64,000 nucleotides of DNA, taken from sequence record MG592456.1. The stretch is one strand, 5' to 3'. The position numbers and the translations under genes were made by a program. The number at the start of each line of letters is the position of its first letter. The first letter of the stretch is position 1. Shown here one piece after another: positions 46,627 through 60,427 of the stretch. The notes beneath the pieces are model-generated. The model made no database searches and had not been told where the DNA came from. It saw only the letters and a program-made list of their open reading frames with translations.

Positions 46627-48702
46627 ATGATTATACAAACACCAGAATCTACTGTCCAAACCAGCGGGAAAATGCGTACTGCTGGTTTTAAAATGAAAGC
46701 CAGCGCAAAAGGCTTCCGCATTATTTCAACCACGCTTTACAAAGATCCGATCTTAGCGATCGTACGTGAAATCACGTGTAATGCATGGGATGGTCATCAA
46801 GCCAACAAAAACACGGATACTCCAATTCAAGTTCATTTACCGAATGCACTTGAGCCATGGTTTAGTGTGAAAGATTTCGGTTGTGGTATGTCGGATGATG
46901 AAATCTTCGGTGTGTATACAACTGTGTTCGACTCAACCAAAGACGGCGATAACGACGCTATTGGTGCGATGGGACTTGGTTCCAAGACGCCATTTAGCTA
47001 CAACAACGGTCAATCGTTCACTGTCAAGTCAATTAAAAACGGATTAAAAGCTGTTTACTCTGCCTATCTTGACAGAGGTGAGCCAGCAATCACGTGTATG
47101 TCGGAGCCAACTCCCACCGATGAACCAAATGGTGTGGAAGTCATAGTTCCTGTGCGTGCTGATGACTTCGGTCGATTCCAACGCTGTGCTGAAGCAGTAC
47201 TGCCGTACTTTGAATCGCCTAGCGTTGAATGCAACTATGACATGCCAGATCTTAATTTCACTGAAATGAATGGTTATAAAACGCGAGAACGCTGGTCTGG
47301 TACTGCTGTATATGCGCTGATGGGAAATGTGTGTTATCCGTTGAACAGCGACTACATCAAAGACATGAGCCGGACGCGCAATTATTTCCGAAGCACTGGC
47401 ATATACATCGAATTTCCGATTGGCGATCTAGATGTGTCTGCGTCTCGTGAAGAGCTTCACTATGACGATCGCACGATCGCTAACATCAATGCCCGTGTTT
47501 CTGCTATCAATGAGAGTTTCATCGTTGATTCGCAAGCTTGGGTAGACGATCAGAATTTTGAGCACGAATCTAATGCATATCGCGCAATACAGAGACGATT
47601 CAGTGCCTATGTTGTCGGTGAGTTGATGTACAACGGGAACCCAGTGAACGATTATCGTGACGCGATGATGAAACATTTCGAGTTGCAAGGTAAAGTCGTT
47701 ATCTACCGACCGGCGCGTGATACTATCGAAGGTGCCCGACGCAGAACTAGCTTCAGTCGCACAAGTTGTATATTGAGTGCTGAACATGATTATATCAAGG
47801 ACCCACTGAAAATCATTGTTGATGATTTGAAAACAGGTGGTGTTGGCATTACCAAGACATATGTCAAAAACACTGGGACCAGTTGCTACTATCATCATGA
47901 CGGCAAACCGTCAACAACTGGTACATTAGAGCTATTGACTGAACGTTTGCGACCTGAAGAGTTCACGATACTCAAGACGAGTGACTTAAAAGCCGAATAC
48001 TCACCGCCAAAAAAGGTGCGCGTACAGGCTCCAGTATCACCAACGATTCAACTGTACAAGTATACACTTGACGATGGACTTCGAACGGCTAACGTTGATC
48101 GTAATGTATTGAAGAATGATAATATTGTGTACGTGAGTATGTTCCGCGATATTATTGAACGGACGGTCGGTAGAGAACATGGCCCTACCCTATCTAGCAC
48201 TCAAGCTATGATGAGTACTATCATGGAGATGCGTGGTATTGATGTGATTTATGTTGCTCGACGCTCTGAGATTAAAACACTTGTTGGGAACAAAAACGCA
48301 GTGAATTTCTTCGATATGAAGTTTAACAAGGCGGAATTGCGTAGTAAAATCAACTGGAAATCATACATACTTTCTCGTGGGCTGTCATATCATTCATACA
48401 GTTTGCGACATAATGATGCATGGCGTAATAGTGAAGTGCGAAAACACTTTGGTTATGGACGTTCTCATCAAAGCCGACATCAAGAGCGCGGTAATCTAGA
48501 CTTATGCTGTGATTACTTCTCAGATATTAAAGCGATGCGAGAAGTCGTCGAGCCACAAATCGATGAGAAGATTTGCAAAATTGAGAAACAACCAAAATAT
48601 GAACTGCTGTTCCGTCTAGTTGACGATGACACTCGCGACACAGATGCAGCAGAATTGATTACTATATTAAAAGGAAGACGCAATGGTAAACCTACCAATT
48701 GA
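46627..48702 (+). CDS. rIIA: rIIA protein
   Basis: LYKDPILAIVREITCNAWD (GHKL), DFGCGMS, IGAMGLGSKTPFSY, SREEL. Confidence 0.92.
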   Translation: MIIQTPESTVQTSGKMRTAGFKMKASAKGFRIISTTLYKDPILAIVREITCNAWDGHQANKNTDTPIQVHLPNALEPWFSVKDFGCGMSDDEIFGVYTTVFDSTKDGDNDAIGAMGLGSKTPFSYNNGQSFTVKSIKNGLKAVYSAYLDRGEPAITCMSEPTPTDEPNGVEVIVPVRADDFGRFQRCAEAVLPYFESPSVECNYDMPDLNFTEMNGYKTRERWSGTAVYALMGNVCYPLNSDYIKDMSRTRNYFRSTGIYIEFPIGDLDVSASREELHYDDRTIANINARVSAINESFIVDSQAWVDDQNFEHESNAYRAIQRRFSAYVVGELMYNGNPVNDYRDAMMKHFELQGKVVIYRPARDTIEGARRRTSFSRTSCILSAEHDYIKDPLKIIVDDLKTGGVGITKTYVKNTGTSCYYHHDGKPSTTGTLELLTERLRPEEFTILKTSDLKAEYSPPKKVRVQAPVSPTIQLYKYTLDDGLRTANVDRNVLKNDNIVYVSMFRDIIERTVGREHGPTLSSTQAMMSTIMEMRGIDVIYVARRSEIKTLVGNKNAVNFFDMKFNKAELRSKINWKSYILSRGLSYHSYSLRHNDAWRNSEVRKHFGYGRSHQSRHQERGNLDLCCDYFSDIKAMREVVEPQIDEKICKIEKQPKYELLFRLVDDDTRDTDAAELITILKGRRNGKPTN

Positions 48703-49774
48703 AGTAAAACAAGCGATTGTTCGTGATGCAGCGAATGGTATGACTCAGAAAGACAACGCAGCGAAGAATGGTACATCGTGTACCACGCTTCGACGTGTAT
48801 TAGCAGAGCATCGCGAAGGCAAATTCAGCTTGAATACTGCAAAAAACGTTGCTTTGGCTGCTAAGTCGAAGCGAAAGGCGAAATCTCCTAAAGCCTCGAA
48901 GCCTAAGTCGAAGCGAAAGGCAAAGGCGAAAGCAGTTCCGTCGGCCGTTGCTGAAGCGTCGGATCAGTTCAATAAGAACTTAGCAGCAATGATTGCAGAG
49001 CCAAAGTCCGATACTGTTGCTGAAGTGTCTGCTAATATTGTTGACGATACGAAAGAGCCGGTCGAGAAGTTTGCATACGTGATTACGCCAATGAATGTGT
49101 CGTTTACCGTCGATGGTGATGCGTATTCTGCTGACATCACGACCAAGAACTATCAAGACATTGTGCTTGCATTACTGTCTGGCGACGGTGCAGGGGCGAT
49201 TGCATTACTTGATATTGCTACTGGCATTGAAGAATTCATGCAAGGTCACGTGAGTGTTAAAGGTGGTGTGGTCAAATACAGAAATCTAGCCGTTGATGGC
49301 GGCATGACAGGTCGTATTCTCGAAGCAATGGCAGCAGGTGATGAGACAAAGGTTGCAGTTATGGTTAAGTTCTTCGAGAACTTGATTCAGAATCCATCTG
49401 AGCGTGCTATTAACGAGCTGTATGGGTTCTTAGAAGCTACGGACATCGAATTGACTGATGATGGTCACTTCTTAGCGTTCAAGCGTGTTAGAGACAATTA
49501 CACTGACGTTCATAGTGGTAAGTTTGACAACTCACCGGGTCAAACTGTGTGGATGCAGCGACATCATGTTGATGACAACAAAGAACAGACTTGTTCAAGT
49601 GGGCTGCATGTATGCGCGAAGAGCTACTTGCCGTACTTCAGTGGTGCTCGTGTTGTCATGTGCAAGGTCAACCCGCGTGATGTAGTGTCTGTACCCGTCG
49701 ATTACAACAACGCGAAGCTCCGCTGTAATGAGTACACCGTGACTCATGAATGCAAGCCAAGCGAATACGCATAA
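48683..49774 (+). CDS. rIIB: rIIB protein
   Basis: FFENLIQNPS, ELYGFL, DGHFLAFKRV, CSSGLHV, PRDVVSVP. Confidence 0.93.
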   Translation: MVNLPIEVKQAIVRDAANGMTQKDNAAKNGTSCTTLRRVLAEHREGKFSLNTAKNVALAAKSKRKAKSPKASKPKSKRKAKAKAVPSAVAEASDQFNKNLAAMIAEPKSDTVAEVSANIVDDTKEPVEKFAYVITPMNVSFTVDGDAYSADITTKNYQDIVLALLSGDGAGAIALLDIATGIEEFMQGHVSVKGGVVKYRNLAVDGGMTGRILEAMAAGDETKVAVMVKFFENLIQNPSERAINELYGFLEATDIELTDDGHFLAFKRVRDNYTDVHSGKFDNSPGQTVWMQRHHVDDNKEQTCSSGLHVCAKSYLPYFSGARVVMCKVNPRDVVSVPVDYNNAKLRCNEYTVTHECKPSEYA

Positions 49775-49784
49775 GCAATATATT

Positions 49785-49821
49785 AAAAAGGTTGACTTCG
49801 GTCAACCTTTTTGCGTATTAT
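49785..49821 (+). terminator. Terminator containing the -35 of the next promoter
   Basis: AAAAAGGTTGAC-TTCG-GTCAACCTTTTT; TTGACT-18-TATTAT. Confidence 0.85.
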
Positions 49822-49851: not shown

Positions 49852-50382
49852 ATGACAGCAACAGAGCAACGTAGAGCTAATAGAGCGAACAAAACGGCTG
49901 AGACATACAATCACCTTCAACGTCAGTATATCGCTATGAAAGAGCGTTGTGCAGAGCTTGAAGCACAGCTTGAAGCACAGCTTGAAGCACAGTCTGAGTT
50001 CAGCCCATCGACATTCGACATCAACTTGCTTGATAGTGATGATCCACGTGTGCATATTCAAATGCTGCGCACTCTTATGGAAGAAAATCGTGAATTGCAA
50101 TCTACAATTGCCTATGAAGGTGTCGTTGAAGCGCATCATCAGACACTAATTGCCCAATTAAAGGCTGAGGTGAAATCGCAGAAGGCAGACCATGAGTTTT
50201 GGTTTGATGCTTACACGCGCTATCGTGAGAAAACAGATAGGTTGGAAAGTATTGAAAAGATCCTGACGCGACGTTGTTACGAACTGCAATCAGACGTTGA
50301 GGCGAACAACACCAAGAACATCTTTGGTGCGCTTGTTGCTTCTAGCATAACTGCTGTTGTAATGTTCTTTATTATGAAATAA
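49852..50382 (+). CDS. Coiled-coil protein with C-terminal TM (start re-assigned)
   Basis: GAGAACAATATTATG; AGCTTGAAGCAC x3 at 49955-49990. Confidence 0.7.
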   Translation: MTATEQRRANRANKTAETYNHLQRQYIAMKERCAELEAQLEAQLEAQSEFSPSTFDINLLDSDDPRVHIQMLRTLMEENRELQSTIAYEGVVEAHHQTLIAQLKAEVKSQKADHEFWFDAYTRYREKTDRLESIEKILTRRCYELQSDVEANNTKNIFGALVASSITAVVMFFIMK

Positions 50383-50395
50383 TTTCAGAAAGTGC

Positions 50396-50425
50396 TTGCT
50401 ATTATCATCATGATAGATGATAATA
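50396..50425 (+). promoter_or_regulatory. sigma70 promoter within a 10-bp inverted repeat
   Basis: TTGCTA-17-GATAAT; TATTATCATC/GATGATAATA. Confidence 0.75.
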
Positions 50426-50466
50426 GCTCTGTCGAAACAAAACAACTACTTAAAAGTGAGAAAAAT

Positions 50467-50796
50467 ATGACTTCAATCAATACTGTAAAACAACTTATCG
50501 TTGCTGATGACGCTGCAATTGTTAATCAATCTGAATTTCGCATTGCATTTGCATTTGCATTCGGTTGTATGACCGAATCAGATCGTACTGTGTTTGTTGA
50601 TATTCATAAGCCACTACTTGTTGAATATTTCTGTCCAAGTTACTGCACATCCGATGAAGTCGTATTGAGTTCTGACGCTGTACTTGATGCGATTGCTTAC
50701 ATCAAAGAATGTCTAACCATTCATGACTATGCGCTTCTTAAAACCGACTTTCAATTCAACATCGCACAGCTAACAGGTGAATTCAATGAAGTTTAA
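50467..50796 (+). CDS. Hypothetical protein (start re-assigned)
   Basis: GAGAAAAATATG. Confidence 0.7.
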   Translation: MTSINTVKQLIVADDAAIVNQSEFRIAFAFAFGCMTESDRTVFVDIHKPLLVEYFCPSYCTSDEVVLSSDAVLDAIAYIKECLTIHDYALLKTDFQFNIAQLTGEFNEV

Positions 50797-51445
50797 GTCA
50801 TACGATAGCTTCGGTGTTGTTGAATACAACATTGGGATGATCTTTGCTGGGCTGATGGCTTTATCATTCACAATCGCACTGACAGCAGCATCATTGCTAT
50901 ATCGATTTGAATCTGGGGCTGATGGTTCGAACATCAACAGCGCTGGAGACGCTCTGTGGACGATTTGGATGTCAATGAGTACGATTGGGTTCGGGGATCA
51001 TTATCCCGTCACTGTGGGTGGCAGAGTCATCGTAGGGTCTATGTTTGCAGTCGGTGCTACTCTAATCGGGTTAAACATTGGTATTGCATCGGCATGGGTG
51101 ACATCTAAGTTCGACAAGAGCGTTCAAAATCGCGTGTTGAAGCTGCAAAGCGATACATTGATACAGAAGATAGATCGTCTTGAGACATTCTTGAATGTAG
51201 ATCAGACCGTTTACTTTGGCCCTGATGCTCATGGGATAGATGAAACTCTTAAACAGAAGCAATTTGACGTTTCGCAAGGTAAAGCGATTGTTACGCTTGG
51301 ACGTGATGACGGTGGCAGATTCATTGTAGCTACTAATACACAGACTGACAGCGGAAGAAACAAGCTGAAATGGATCAGTTACTTGAAATTTGACGACGCA
51401 TTAGACTTTTACAATGACGTAGCTGTCGAATTAGACGCAGTCTAA
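50786..51445 (+). CDS. KcsA-like 2-TM potassium channel
   Basis: TM1, pore helix GDALWTIWMSMS, filter TIGFGD, YPVT..GR, TM2, coiled coil. Confidence 0.9.
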   Translation: MKFKSYDSFGVVEYNIGMIFAGLMALSFTIALTAASLLYRFESGADGSNINSAGDALWTIWMSMSTIGFGDHYPVTVGGRVIVGSMFAVGATLIGLNIGIASAWVTSKFDKSVQNRVLKLQSDTLIQKIDRLETFLNVDQTVYFGPDAHGIDETLKQKQFDVSQGKAIVTLGRDDGGRFIVATNTQTDSGRNKLKWISYLKFDDALDFYNDVAVELDAV

Positions 51446-51450
51446 CAAAT

Positions 51451-51484
51451 CGCAGACAGTAAAAAGGAGTCCGAAGACTCCTTT
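51451..51484 (-). terminator. Minus-strand intrinsic terminator
   Basis: Minus strand: AAAGGAGTC-TTCG-GACTCC-TTTTT-ACTGTCTG. Confidence 0.8.
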
Positions 51485-51554
51485 AGTGAAAGCGCGACGA
51501 TGTTTAACCAATCGCAGTGACCGACTACTGCTTTCGCATAGTCGAACTCTCACT
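51461..51554 (-). ncRNA. Candidate structured small RNA (three-way junction plus terminator)
   Basis: P1 AGUGAGAG/CUUUCACU; P2 CGACUAUGC-GAAA-GCAGUAGUCG; P3 GCGAU..AUCGU; no ORF. Confidence 0.5.
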
Positions 51555-51663
51555 TATATTTAGAACTATTGTACGCCCTATTACTCATAAAGAAGTACAA
51601 TAATGAGACGTTCGCACTGAAAATTAACTGAAGTGCTTGAAAAACAACTAAAGGAAAAAAATC

Positions 51664-60388: not shown

Positions 60389-60427
60389 AAAAAAGGGTTG
60401 ACATCAGTCAGCCCTTTTCTGTATCAT
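60389..60427 (+). terminator. Terminator containing the -35 of the next promoter
   Basis: AAAAGGGTTGAC-ATCA-GTCAGCCCTTTT; TTGACA-18-TATCAT; TATCGAAAC leader. Confidence 0.8.

What the first reader, a model, noticed from the sequence alone, without database searches (positions are those of the whole stretch)
50786..51445. Phage-encoded KcsA-type potassium channel
It has a complete pore (W..W pore helix, TIGFGD filter, YPVT..GR), a coiled coil and an extra C-terminal domain, and it is under an early promoter. K+ channels are established in algal viruses but are uncommon in phages. Possible roles are membrane-potential control, superinfection exclusion, or countering defences that sense or cause K+ efflux (inference).
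Basis: partly seen in the sequence, partly recalled or inferred. Interest (0 to 1): 0.65.

Follow-up and report, generated by a model that had tools for sequence, protein, structure and literature searches.

The report
Vibriophage KcsA-like potassium channel gene
A KVP40-like marine phage really does carry a complete small potassium-channel gene with an extra cytoplasmic domain, but this very protein was already listed as a putative phage K+ channel in 2018, and its role in infection is still untested.

Summary
Window 50786-51445 (+) is an intact 219-aa ORF with two TM helices, a pore helix, a TIGFGD filter, a long post-TM2 helix and a separate C-terminal domain. Pfam Ion_trans_2 is above threshold. 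KcsA is the best solved relative by sequence and by fold.

The window is Vibrio phage 1.081.O._10N.286.52.C2 (MG592456.1, Schizotequatrovirus). The protein is AUR85893.1, which Greiner et al. 2018 (PMC6163359, Fig. 3, Table S3) list as a putative K+ channel. So it is already known as a prediction. I found no functional study.

Added here:
- The C-terminal domain (residues 153-219) is a four-strand-plus-helix fold, nearest to WGR and PUR domains by structure only. By sequence it occurs only fused to these phage channels. The nearest bacterial channels (142-183 aa) lack it.
- The whole architecture is kept in five Vibrio-phage lineages. In two it follows a Na+/Ca2+ exchanger gene.
- The gene is accessory: 18 KVP40-type genomes lack exactly this gene.
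- The "early promoter" is about 965 nt upstream. It is a conserved hairpin carrying TTGACT-18-TATTAT at the head of a three-gene operon after rIIA/rIIB. Timing is inferred.
- The database label "cAMP-dependent Kef-type transporter" is unsupported.

The parts
49784..49821 (+). Hairpin (13-bp stem, UUCG loop) just after rIIB. It carries a TTGACT -35 box in its 5' arm, followed 18 nt later by a TATTAT -10 box. Probably both the rIIB terminator and the sigma-70-type (early) promoter of the operon that ends with the channel gene.
   Evidence: Promoter scan scores 10 of 12. Fold energy is -16.3 kcal/mol with z -6.4. The same element lies at the same place in KVP40, VH7D, nt-1 and ValKK3. There are 4-6 copies per genome, all on the gene strand, and 0 control matches.
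49852..50382 (+). First gene of the operon: 176-aa coiled-coil protein with a C-terminal TM helix. No homologue was seen at this position in the other Schizotequatrovirus loci examined.
   Evidence: ORF list and GenBank CDS NVP1081O_156. Only a weak PHROG 1511 hit. No Pfam, NCBIfam or PADLOC family.
50467..50796 (+). Second gene: PHROG 14270 protein of unknown function. GenBank starts it at 50410, but homologues align from the ATG at 50467. It overlaps the channel start by 11 nt.
   Evidence: PHROG 14270 E 2.8e-27. 43% identical to KVP40.0147. It also occurs in D484-type phages that lack the channel, so it is not an obligate channel partner.
50786..51445 (+). K+ channel CDS, 219 aa (AUR85893.1).
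50831..50911 (+). Outer transmembrane helix TM1 (residues 16-42).
   Evidence: AlphaFold helix 16-42. Hydropathy.
50942..50998 (+). Pore helix (residues 53-64) and selectivity filter TIGFGD (residues 66-71, nt 50981-50998).
   Evidence: Translation. Alignment to KcsA T75-D80. The filter is invariant in 9 relatives.
51014..51106 (+). Inner helix TM2 (residues 77-107), with the invariant hinge glycine G90 aligned to KcsA G99.
51107..51190 (+). Cytoplasmic continuation of TM2 (residues 108-135). It holds the conserved D-x-S-V/I-x-N-R-x-L motif and a short heptad pattern, and is the presumed four-helix bundle of the tetramer.
   Evidence: Continuous helix 77-135. Full-length KcsA 3eff aligned over 130 columns. 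D110, N115 and L118 are invariant, also in the short bacterial-type relatives.
51242..51442 (+). C-terminal cytoplasmic domain (residues 153-219): four antiparallel strands plus a helix. It is specific to the phage channels, and the conserved DAHGID motif lies just before it.
   Evidence: Domain model pLDDT 89. Nearest folds are WGR domains, Z 7.9, with an ESM Atlas WGR cluster at TM 0.72. There is no Pfam hit. The profile search of 1.84 billion proteins found it only in channel fusions. H149, D152, Q157, T170, G172, D174 and G177 are invariant across five phage lineages.
51463..51484 (.). 9-bp hairpin 18 nt after the stop codon. The T-run is weak on the + strand and good on the - strand. It may end the operon, and it also belongs to the antisense RNA candidate noted earlier by the scan.
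Evidence: Fold energies -16.2 kcal/mol (+) and -19.9 kcal/mol (-).

Best explanation
Identity (shown by sequence and fold). The gene encodes a small two-transmembrane K+ channel subunit of the KcsA type. The architecture is a cytoplasmic N-terminus, TM1, a periplasm-facing pore helix and TIGFGD filter, and TM2 with a glycine hinge. TM2 continues as a cytoplasmic helix.

Assembly (inferred from the family). Four subunits assemble in the host inner membrane into a K+-selective pore. The post-TM2 helices form a bundle below the gate.

C-terminal domain. A roughly 70-residue domain is found only on the phage versions. By analogy with other pore-plus-cytoplasmic-domain channels, it is most likely a regulatory or gating module. 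It may sense a ligand, an ion or a partner protein.

Expression. The gene is the last of a three-gene operon directly after rIIA/rIIB. A conserved hairpin-embedded sigma-70-type promoter heads the operon, so it is probably expressed early by unmodified host RNA polymerase (inferred).

Effect on the cell (inferred from basic membrane energetics). An open K+ pore pulls the membrane potential towards the K+ equilibrium potential. It also gives an electrophoretic route for K+ re-uptake.

Most likely role. The phage controls host K+ content and membrane potential during takeover. For example, it could make good the K+ leak caused by DNA injection.

Status of the gene. It is an accessory gene rather than a core one.
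For: Channel identity:
- Pfam Ion_trans_2 scores 37.8 bits against a cut-off of 22.5.
- PHROG 15627 scores E 9e-80.
- KcsA is the top PDB sequence hit, with the filter, the pore-helix Trp and the hinge Gly aligned.
- The model superposes on KcsA at rmsd 1.7 A, and full-length KcsA is the top Foldseek hit.
- The filter, G90 and the post-TM2 motif are invariant in relatives.

Phage-specific C-terminal domain:
- It is absent from the 80 best bacterial relatives. The closest of these are 142-183 aa.
- A profile search of 1.84 billion representatives finds it only in channel fusions.
- It is conserved with invariant polar residues across five phage lineages at 25-33% identity.

Promoter and operon:
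- The element lies at 49792-49821 and is conserved at the same place in four other phages.
- There is no TATAAATA late-type box in the operon.
- The channel start overlaps the upstream ORF by 11 nt.

Other points:
- Composition is like the rest of the genome: GC 0.44 against 0.43.
- Accessory status: 18 D484/6E35.1a-type genomes with a close rIIB have no channel hit, and in D484 the flanking genes abut.
- Ion-handling context elsewhere: a TerD, Na+/Ca2+ exchanger and channel cassette occurs in phages 1.084.O and D69.
Against: - No conductance, selectivity, localisation or expression data exist for this or any vibriophage channel in the literature I could search.
- Tetramer prediction could not be run.
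- No RNA run holds the sequence, so 'early' rests on a consensus match and its conservation.
- The -35 box lies inside a hairpin that may be only a terminator.
- The KcsA pH-sensor residues and E71 are not kept (M62 aligns with E71), so gating cannot be inferred from KcsA.
- The C-domain's resemblance to WGR is at the noise ceiling of the aligner (Z 7.9) and has no sequence support.
- The gene's absence from close relatives shows it is dispensable for the basic lytic cycle.
Confidence: 0.7

Rival explanations
1. Superinfection exclusion. The early-made channel partly depolarises the infected cell, or changes its K+ gradient, so that later phages cannot complete DNA entry. This parallels the role proposed for the chlorovirus channel Kcv.
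For: The location is in the early region next to rIIA/rIIB, which are membrane-associated exclusion-related genes in T4. The gene has an accessory, patchy distribution typical of competition genes. Greiner et al. note that T4 and T5 DNA entry involves K+ conductance.
Against: There is no experimental link. There are no PADLOC defence-family hits for the channel or its neighbours. Depolarisation would also cost the resident phage energy. The rII neighbourhood is shared by many unrelated small early genes.
Confidence: 0.15
2. Counter-defence. The channel offsets host abortive-infection systems that kill by collapsing membrane potential or K+ content, or its C-terminal domain senses a defence signal and opens the pore.
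For: It is adjacent to rIIA/rIIB, which in T4 counter the Rex membrane-depolarising system (established knowledge; synteny). The phage-specific sensor-like C-domain has conserved polar residues. The gene is accessory.
Against: This is purely inferential. A passive K+ pore cannot restore a collapsed potential. There is no similarity to known anti-defence proteins. The one weak fold row to a cyclic-nucleotide sponge (9p8l, TM 0.41) is not significant.
Confidence: 0.08
3. Virion-delivered channel that helps DNA injection, as Greiner et al. suggested by analogy with Kcv. The protein would be packaged and inserted into the host membrane at infection.
For: The suggestion is in PMC6163359. Chlorovirus Kcv is a precedent.
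Against: The gene lies in an early-type operon with a sigma-70-like promoter and no late TATAAATA box. It is flanked by early-region genes (rII, dda) and not by structural genes. Tailed phages have no internal membrane to carry a channel (established knowledge).
Confidence: 0.04
4. The protein has the K+ channel fold but does not act as a K+-selective pore. It might be non-conducting, a non-selective cation leak that affects lysis timing, or a scaffold whose active part is the C-terminal domain.
For: No functional data exist. Several viral channel-like ORFs failed functional tests in Greiner et al.. Truncated versions occur in some phages: phi-ST2 at 161 aa with 1 TM, and 2.275.O at 149 aa.
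Against: The filter, the pore-helix aromatics, the hinge glycine and the post-TM2 motif are strictly conserved at 25-57% overall identity across five phage lineages. That argues for selection on a working pore.
Confidence: 0.08

Closest known systems
Putative K+ channels of KVP40-like vibriophages (phi-pp2 'putative potassium channel protein'; PHROG 15627; Greiner et al. 2018, Viruses 10:456, Table S3)
   Same: It is the same family and in fact the same protein. AUR85893.1 (219 aa, 2 TM) is listed in that table. It is 49-57% identical to the KVP40, phi-pp2, nt-1 and VH7D orthologues over 96% of its length, and it sits at the same place downstream of rIIB.
   Different: This phage lacks the lipoprotein gene (KVP40.0149) that overlaps the channel stop in KVP40, and also lacks the reverse-strand membrane-protein gene after it. 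It has an extra coiled-coil TM gene at the head of the operon. The published work gives no domain analysis of the C-terminal extension and no function.
KcsA (Streptomyces lividans pH-gated K+ channel; PDB 1k4c, 3eff)
   Same: Two-TM pore with a pore helix, a T-x-G-x-G-D filter, a glycine hinge, and a C-terminal helix continuing from TM2. It is the best solved relative by sequence (E 1e-8) and by fold (rmsd 1.7 A).
   Different: The filter is GFG rather than GYG. Met aligns with KcsA E71. The pH-sensor residues are not conserved. An additional 70-residue beta/alpha domain follows the helix. Identity is only about 27% over the pore.
Short 2-TM channels of marine Gammaproteobacteria (Thalassotalea, Colwellia, Oceanospirillaceae, Candidatus Njordibacter), 142-183 aa
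   Same: These are the closest cellular relatives, at 35-45% identity over residues 1 to about 140. They share the N-terminal D-x-x-G-x-x-x-Y motif, the STIGFGD filter, the post-TM2 D-x-x-V-x-N-R-x-L motif and the heptad helix.
   Different: They end after the helix and have no C-terminal beta/alpha domain. They are chromosomal, at the same position in three Njordibacter genomes.
Kcv and other algal-virus K+ channels (Phycodnaviridae, Mimiviridae)
   Same: Virus-encoded minimal 2-TM K+ channels. Some are functionally proven and have been proposed to alter host membrane potential.
   Different: They are eukaryotic-virus proteins of about 80-125 aa with no cytoplasmic domains. Greiner et al. argue that the viral channels do not share a common origin.
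WGR domain (Pfam PF05406; PARP1 2cr9, PARP3 2eoc, Bacteroides 2ra8) and PUR repeat
   Same: The C-terminal domain has the same four-strand-plus-helix topology. WGR domains fill four of the top five VIA-align rows (Z 7.0-7.9, 59-75 residues aligned) and form the top ESM Atlas structural cluster (TM 0.72). PUR-alpha appears in Foldseek.
   Different: There is no sequence signal: no Pfam hit even at E up to 1, and no WGR chain in a profile search of the PDB. The W-G-R motif is absent. Z is below 8, within the range the tool reports for unrelated small folds. Many 60-90 aa phage ORFans share the fold.

Membership tests
Tetrameric K+ channel pore family (Pfam PF07885 Ion_trans_2; KcsA type) | Match to the family profile above the curated threshold | tested here: met
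   37.8 bits against a cut-off of 22.5, E 1.8e-9, residues 30-105
Tetrameric K+ channel pore family (Pfam PF07885 Ion_trans_2; KcsA type) | Signature filter T-[VI]-G-[YF]-G-D preceded by a pore helix with aromatic residues | tested here: met
   T66-I-G-F-G-D71 with W58 and W61. It aligns to KcsA T75-D80 and W67 and is invariant in relatives
Tetrameric K+ channel pore family (Pfam PF07885 Ion_trans_2; KcsA type) | TM1, pore helix and TM2 fold, with a gating-hinge glycine in TM2 | tested here: met
   Helices 16-42, 53-64 and 77 onward. Rmsd 1.7 A to KcsA over 91 alignment columns. G90 aligns to KcsA G99 and is invariant
Tetrameric K+ channel pore family (Pfam PF07885 Ion_trans_2; KcsA type) | Homotetramer assembly | not testable with these tools
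Tetrameric K+ channel pore family (Pfam PF07885 Ion_trans_2; KcsA type) | K+-selective conductance | not testable with these tools
   This needs complementation or electrophysiology. None has been published for vibriophage channels in the searched library
'cAMP-dependent Kef-type K+ transporter' (label of PHROG 15627 and several GenBank records) | A Kef/CPA2 antiporter domain, an RCK/KTN domain or a cyclic-nucleotide-binding domain | tested here: not met
   The Pfam scan at E up to 1 finds only Ion_trans_2, Ion_trans and a chance hit. The C-terminal part alone finds none of these domains. NCBIfam finds only weak K+ channel models
WGR domain (PF05406), for the C-terminal domain | Profile match and the conserved W-G-R motif | tested here: not met
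   No PF05406 hit at E up to 1. No WGR chain in the profile search of the PDB at E up to 10. There is no WGR tripeptide in the domain
WGR domain (PF05406), for the C-terminal domain | WGR fold | tested here: inconclusive
   PARP1 and PARP3 WGR are the top VIA-align rows at Z 7.9, rmsd 2.4 A, 75 residues aligned. The top ESM Atlas cluster is WGR at TM 0.72. But Z is below 8, Foldseek E is 0.1-0.3, and the same small fold is common
T4-type early gene | Sigma-70-like promoter upstream, no late promoter, early transcription | tested here: inconclusive
   A conserved TTGACT-18-TATTAT lies at 49792-49821. There is no TATAAATA in the operon. No RNA data exist

The most novel reading that the evidence does not exclude
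The phage-only C-terminal domain (WGR/PUR-like fold, with invariant His, Asp, Gln and T-x-G-x-D-x-x-G residues) may be a new kind of cytoplasmic sensor that gates a K+ pore. It could respond to a divalent cation or to a nucleotide or nucleic-acid signal. That would make these proteins a previously undescribed class of ligand-gated K+ channel, which vibriophages use together with Ca2+-handling genes (TerD, Na+/Ca2+ exchanger) to reset host ion balance or to answer a host defence signal.
Probability: 0.12. Interest if true: 0.7.

Novelty: already known. Interest (0 to 1): 0.33.

Why it matters
Phage-encoded K+ channels are rare. They were found in 37 of 50,697 phage records here, and none has been studied functionally. 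They offer a simple way to ask how a lytic phage manipulates host membrane potential and K+ content, and they are small, tractable model channels. The existence of this gene is not news, because it was published as a prediction in 2018. What remains open, and is now better framed, is the conserved phage-specific cytoplasmic domain. It has no sequence relatives outside the family and could be a new gating module. The channel also recurs next to Ca2+-handling genes in other vibriophage lineages. Close relatives that lack exactly this gene provide natural controls for a fitness or exclusion phenotype.

Tried and rejected
- The search for related loci with the single protein in IMG/VR found nothing. 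With the alignment it returned only KVP40 and VH7D.
- The word-based search on the C-terminal region returned only the query.
- The big profile search with the C-domain gave two extra hits, P0013 and P0015. These are tandem-repeat proteins whose nine and five weak stretches of 6-9 bits each add up, so I rejected them as artefacts.
- Sequence tests for a WGR relationship failed. A search for PF05406 in five marine genomes, meant to build a comparison profile, found none, so no profile-profile test was made.
- PADLOC found no defence families for the channel or its neighbours.
- I considered the PHROG 14270 gene upstream as an obligate channel partner, because it always overlaps or abuts the channel gene. 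I rejected this because D484-type phages keep it without the channel.
- I rejected recent horizontal acquisition because the composition is ordinary.
- The 9 of 12 promoter-like site at 50396-50424 is not excluded, but it is at chance level for this AT-rich DNA: 19 sites found against 8.5 expected in 4 kb.

Full report
**Where the window comes from.** The stretch 50392-51600 is 100% identical to Vibrio phage 1.081.O._10N.286.52.C2 (MG592456.1, 239 kb). This is a Schizotequatrovirus (KVP40-like T4-type phage) from Nahant seawater, and the record gives its host as Shewanella. Window position equals record position minus 62000. The neighbours fit that identity: rIIA (46627-48702) and rIIB (48683-49774) lie upstream, and an nrdC.11-like nucleotidyltransferase and a Dda helicase lie downstream.

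**The observation.**
- ATG 50786 to stop 51445 is an intact 219-aa ORF (P0001). It has an AGGTG ribosome-binding site 6 nt upstream. It is identical to GenBank CDS NVP1081O_158 (AUR85893.1), which is annotated only as 'TMhelix containing protein'.
- The sequence shows two hydrophobic helices (about 16-41 and 80-106). It also shows W58 and W61 in a pore helix, the filter T66-I-G-F-G-D71, and HYPVTVGGR after it.
- Pfam Ion_trans_2 matches above its curated threshold: 37.8 against 22.5 bits.
- KcsA chains are the best solved relatives by sequence (E about 1e-8). The filter aligns residue for residue, and G90 falls on the KcsA hinge glycine G99. M62 lies where KcsA has E71.
- An AlphaFold model (mean pLDDT 77) gives TM1 16-42, pore helix 53-64, one long helix 77-135, a poorly modelled linker 136-152, and then four strands and a helix at 153-218.
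- Foldseek puts full-length KcsA (3eff) first and superposes the pore on many KcsA entries at rmsd 1.7 A over about 90 residues.

**Already known.**
- Greiner et al. 2018 (Viruses 10:456, PMC6163359) searched virus genomes for transport proteins. [quoted passage not shown] Their Figure 3 names this phage ('Vp1'), and Table S3 lists 'Vibrio phage 1.081.O._10N.286.52.C2, 219 aa, 2 TM, AUR85893.1'.
- They note that the phage proteins are longer than the nearest bacterial one and that any function is speculative. Their functional assays concerned other proteins.
- The phi-pp2 genome paper also names a potassium-channel gene (PMC3468402).
- Several searches found no later functional study of a phage K+ channel in the held library. 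This is not proof that none exists.

**Distribution.**
- tblastn against 50,697 phage records finds the protein in 37 records, all Vibrio phages. About 30 are KVP40-like, at 49-57% identity.
- The rest belong to other lineages at 28-35% identity. They are 1.084.O (142 kb), D69/D181/D148 (187 kb), sm033 (320 kb), VPMCC14 (134 kb) and 2.275.O (349 kb, pore only).
- An alignment of nine phage proteins shows that the whole architecture, including the C-terminal domain, is kept in five lineages. The invariant residues in the C-terminal part are H149, D152, Q157, T170, G172, D174 and G177 (identity matrix).

**The gene is not core.** Forty-seven KVP40-type records have a rIIB at least 57% identical to this one. 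Eighteen of them (D484, 6E35.1a, K5xx and similar) gave no channel hit anywhere. In D484 the homologue of the upstream gene abuts the homologue of the gene that follows the channel in KVP40, so exactly the channel gene is missing.

**Cellular relatives.**
- The closest bacterial proteins are 142-183-aa two-TM channels of marine Gammaproteobacteria: Thalassotalea, Colwellia, Oceanospirillaceae, Candidatus Njordibacter and Amphritea. They are 35-45% identical over residues 1 to about 140.
- They share the N-terminal D-x-x-G-x-x-x-Y motif, the filter, the post-TM2 D-x-x-V-x-N-R-x-L motif and the heptad helix. All of them stop there.
- Vibrio chromosomal relatives are more distant and longer at the N-terminus.
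- The gene's composition matches the phage genome, so there is no sign of a recent transfer.

**The C-terminal domain.**
- Folded alone with five homologues, it gives a confident model (pLDDT 89) of four antiparallel strands and a C-terminal helix.
- It has no Pfam family.
- A profile search of 1.84 billion cluster representatives finds it only in channel fusions, plus two repeat-protein artefacts.
- By structure the nearest solved folds are WGR domains: PARP1 2cr9 and PARP3 2eoc at Z 7.9, and 2ra8 at Z 7.3. The nearest ESM Atlas cluster is also WGR, at TM 0.72. Foldseek adds PUR-alpha weakly.
- BFVD shows the same fold in many 60-90-aa phage proteins of unknown function.
- Z is below 8, which the tool reports as reachable by unrelated small folds. 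No sequence test supports WGR membership, and the W-G-R motif is absent.
- I therefore call it a WGR/PUR-like fold of unknown function, fused to the pore only in phages. The invariant polar residues suggest a binding site. This is inference.

**Genomic context and expression.**
- The channel ATG overlaps the stop of the preceding ORF by 11 nt. That ORF is PHROG 14270, of unknown function, and its real start is probably 50467 by alignment with homologues.
- Before it lies a 176-aa coiled-coil, tail-anchored membrane protein gene (49852-50382).
- Between rIIB and that gene sits a 13-bp hairpin with a UUCG loop (-16.3 kcal/mol, z -6.4). Its 5' arm contains TTGACT, followed 18 nt later by TATTAT, a 10 of 12 match.
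- The same hairpin-promoter element stands at the head of the equivalent operon in KVP40, VH7D, nt-1 and ValKK3. In KVP40 a reverse-strand segD gene, not rIIB, precedes it.
- It occurs 4-6 times per genome, always on the gene strand, with no control matches.
- No TATAAATA late box lies in the operon.
Early timing is inferred from the T4 paradigm. No RNA run holds this sequence.
- A hairpin follows the stop codon (51463-51484). It overlaps an antisense RNA candidate noted earlier by the scan (s1-161479).

**Context in other lineages.** In 1.084.O and D69 the channel directly follows a Na+/Ca2+ exchanger gene (Pfam Na_Ca_ex, E about 1e-30) and TerD-domain genes. The cassette is syntenic between these two phages at 35-54% identity. 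In VPMCC14 the channel follows a glutathionylspermidine synthase gene. This points to ion handling rather than to any specific defence function.

**Mechanism.**
- Shown: the sequence and predicted fold are those of a KcsA-type K+ channel subunit with an intact filter and hinge, and these have been conserved under long divergence.
- Inferred from the family: a homotetramer in the inner membrane, with the filter towards the periplasm and the N-terminus, helix bundle and C-domain in the cytoplasm.
- Inferred from membrane energetics: opening clamps the potential towards the K+ equilibrium potential and lets K+ move down its electrochemical gradient. In an energised marine cell this would mostly be inward.
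- Most likely the phage uses the channel early to control K+ content and membrane potential. The C-domain would act as the regulator.
- Superinfection exclusion, counter-defence, a virion-borne injection aid and a non-conducting protein are kept as rivals with lower weights.

**Labels.** The label 'cAMP-dependent Kef-type K+ transporter', used by PHROG 15627 and several records, is not supported. There is no Kef/CPA2, RCK or cyclic-nucleotide-binding domain.

**Verdict.** It is already in the literature as a prediction for this very protein. The increments here are the definition of the phage-specific C-terminal domain, the accessory status of the gene, the conserved hairpin-promoter operon, and the link to Ca2+-handling genes in other lineages. 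Interest is moderate to low as a discovery, and higher only if the C-domain proves to be a new gating module.

Noticed in passing
window 49784-49821 and about 60397-60427; also record MG592456.1 positions 56619 and 171697; 6 copies each in KVP40 and ValKK3: There is a recurring intergenic element, GTTGAC-N4-GTCARC-N9-TATTAT. It is a strong hairpin whose 5' arm is a -35 box, followed by a -10 box. It always lies on the gene strand, and the reversed-pattern control found none. It looks like a combined terminator and promoter cassette of KVP40-like phages.
   Followed up: partly
L005 5977-6663 (KVP40, AY283928.2 positions 86246-86932): The KVP40 reference genome has an intact 228-aa channel ORF that is not annotated: locus tag 0148 is missing between 0147 and 0149. 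The phi-pp2 paper's statement that the potassium-channel gene is unique to phi-pp2 and not reported in KVP40 is therefore an annotation gap and not a real difference.
   Followed up: yes
L004 1-4636 (phage 1.084.O) and L009 250-4639 (phage D69): A conserved cassette of TerD-domain genes, a Na+/Ca2+ exchanger (Pfam Na_Ca_ex) and the K+ channel occurs in two distantly related Vibrio phages. It is a possible phage ion-homeostasis island.
   Followed up: partly
L005 6660-7145 and 7172-7723 (KVP40.0149, KVP40.0150): In KVP40-type phages the channel stop overlaps the start of a lipoprotein-like gene (signal peptide with an LAAC lipobox, Lys-rich tail). A reverse-strand membrane-protein gene follows. 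Both are missing from the window's phage, which keeps only a 218-nt spacer (51446-51663) holding the antisense RNA candidate noted earlier.
   Followed up: partly
window 48880-48903 (inside rIIB): The GenBank record annotates a 24-nt 'CRISPR spacer 1' match inside the rIIB gene. This presumably marks a host spacer that targets the phage.
   Followed up: no
window 50410-50466: The annotated start of NVP1081O_157 (50410) is probably too far upstream. Homologues in KVP40, VH7D and D484 align from the ATG at 50467. That leaves room for the weak promoter-like site at 50396-50424.
   Followed up: partly
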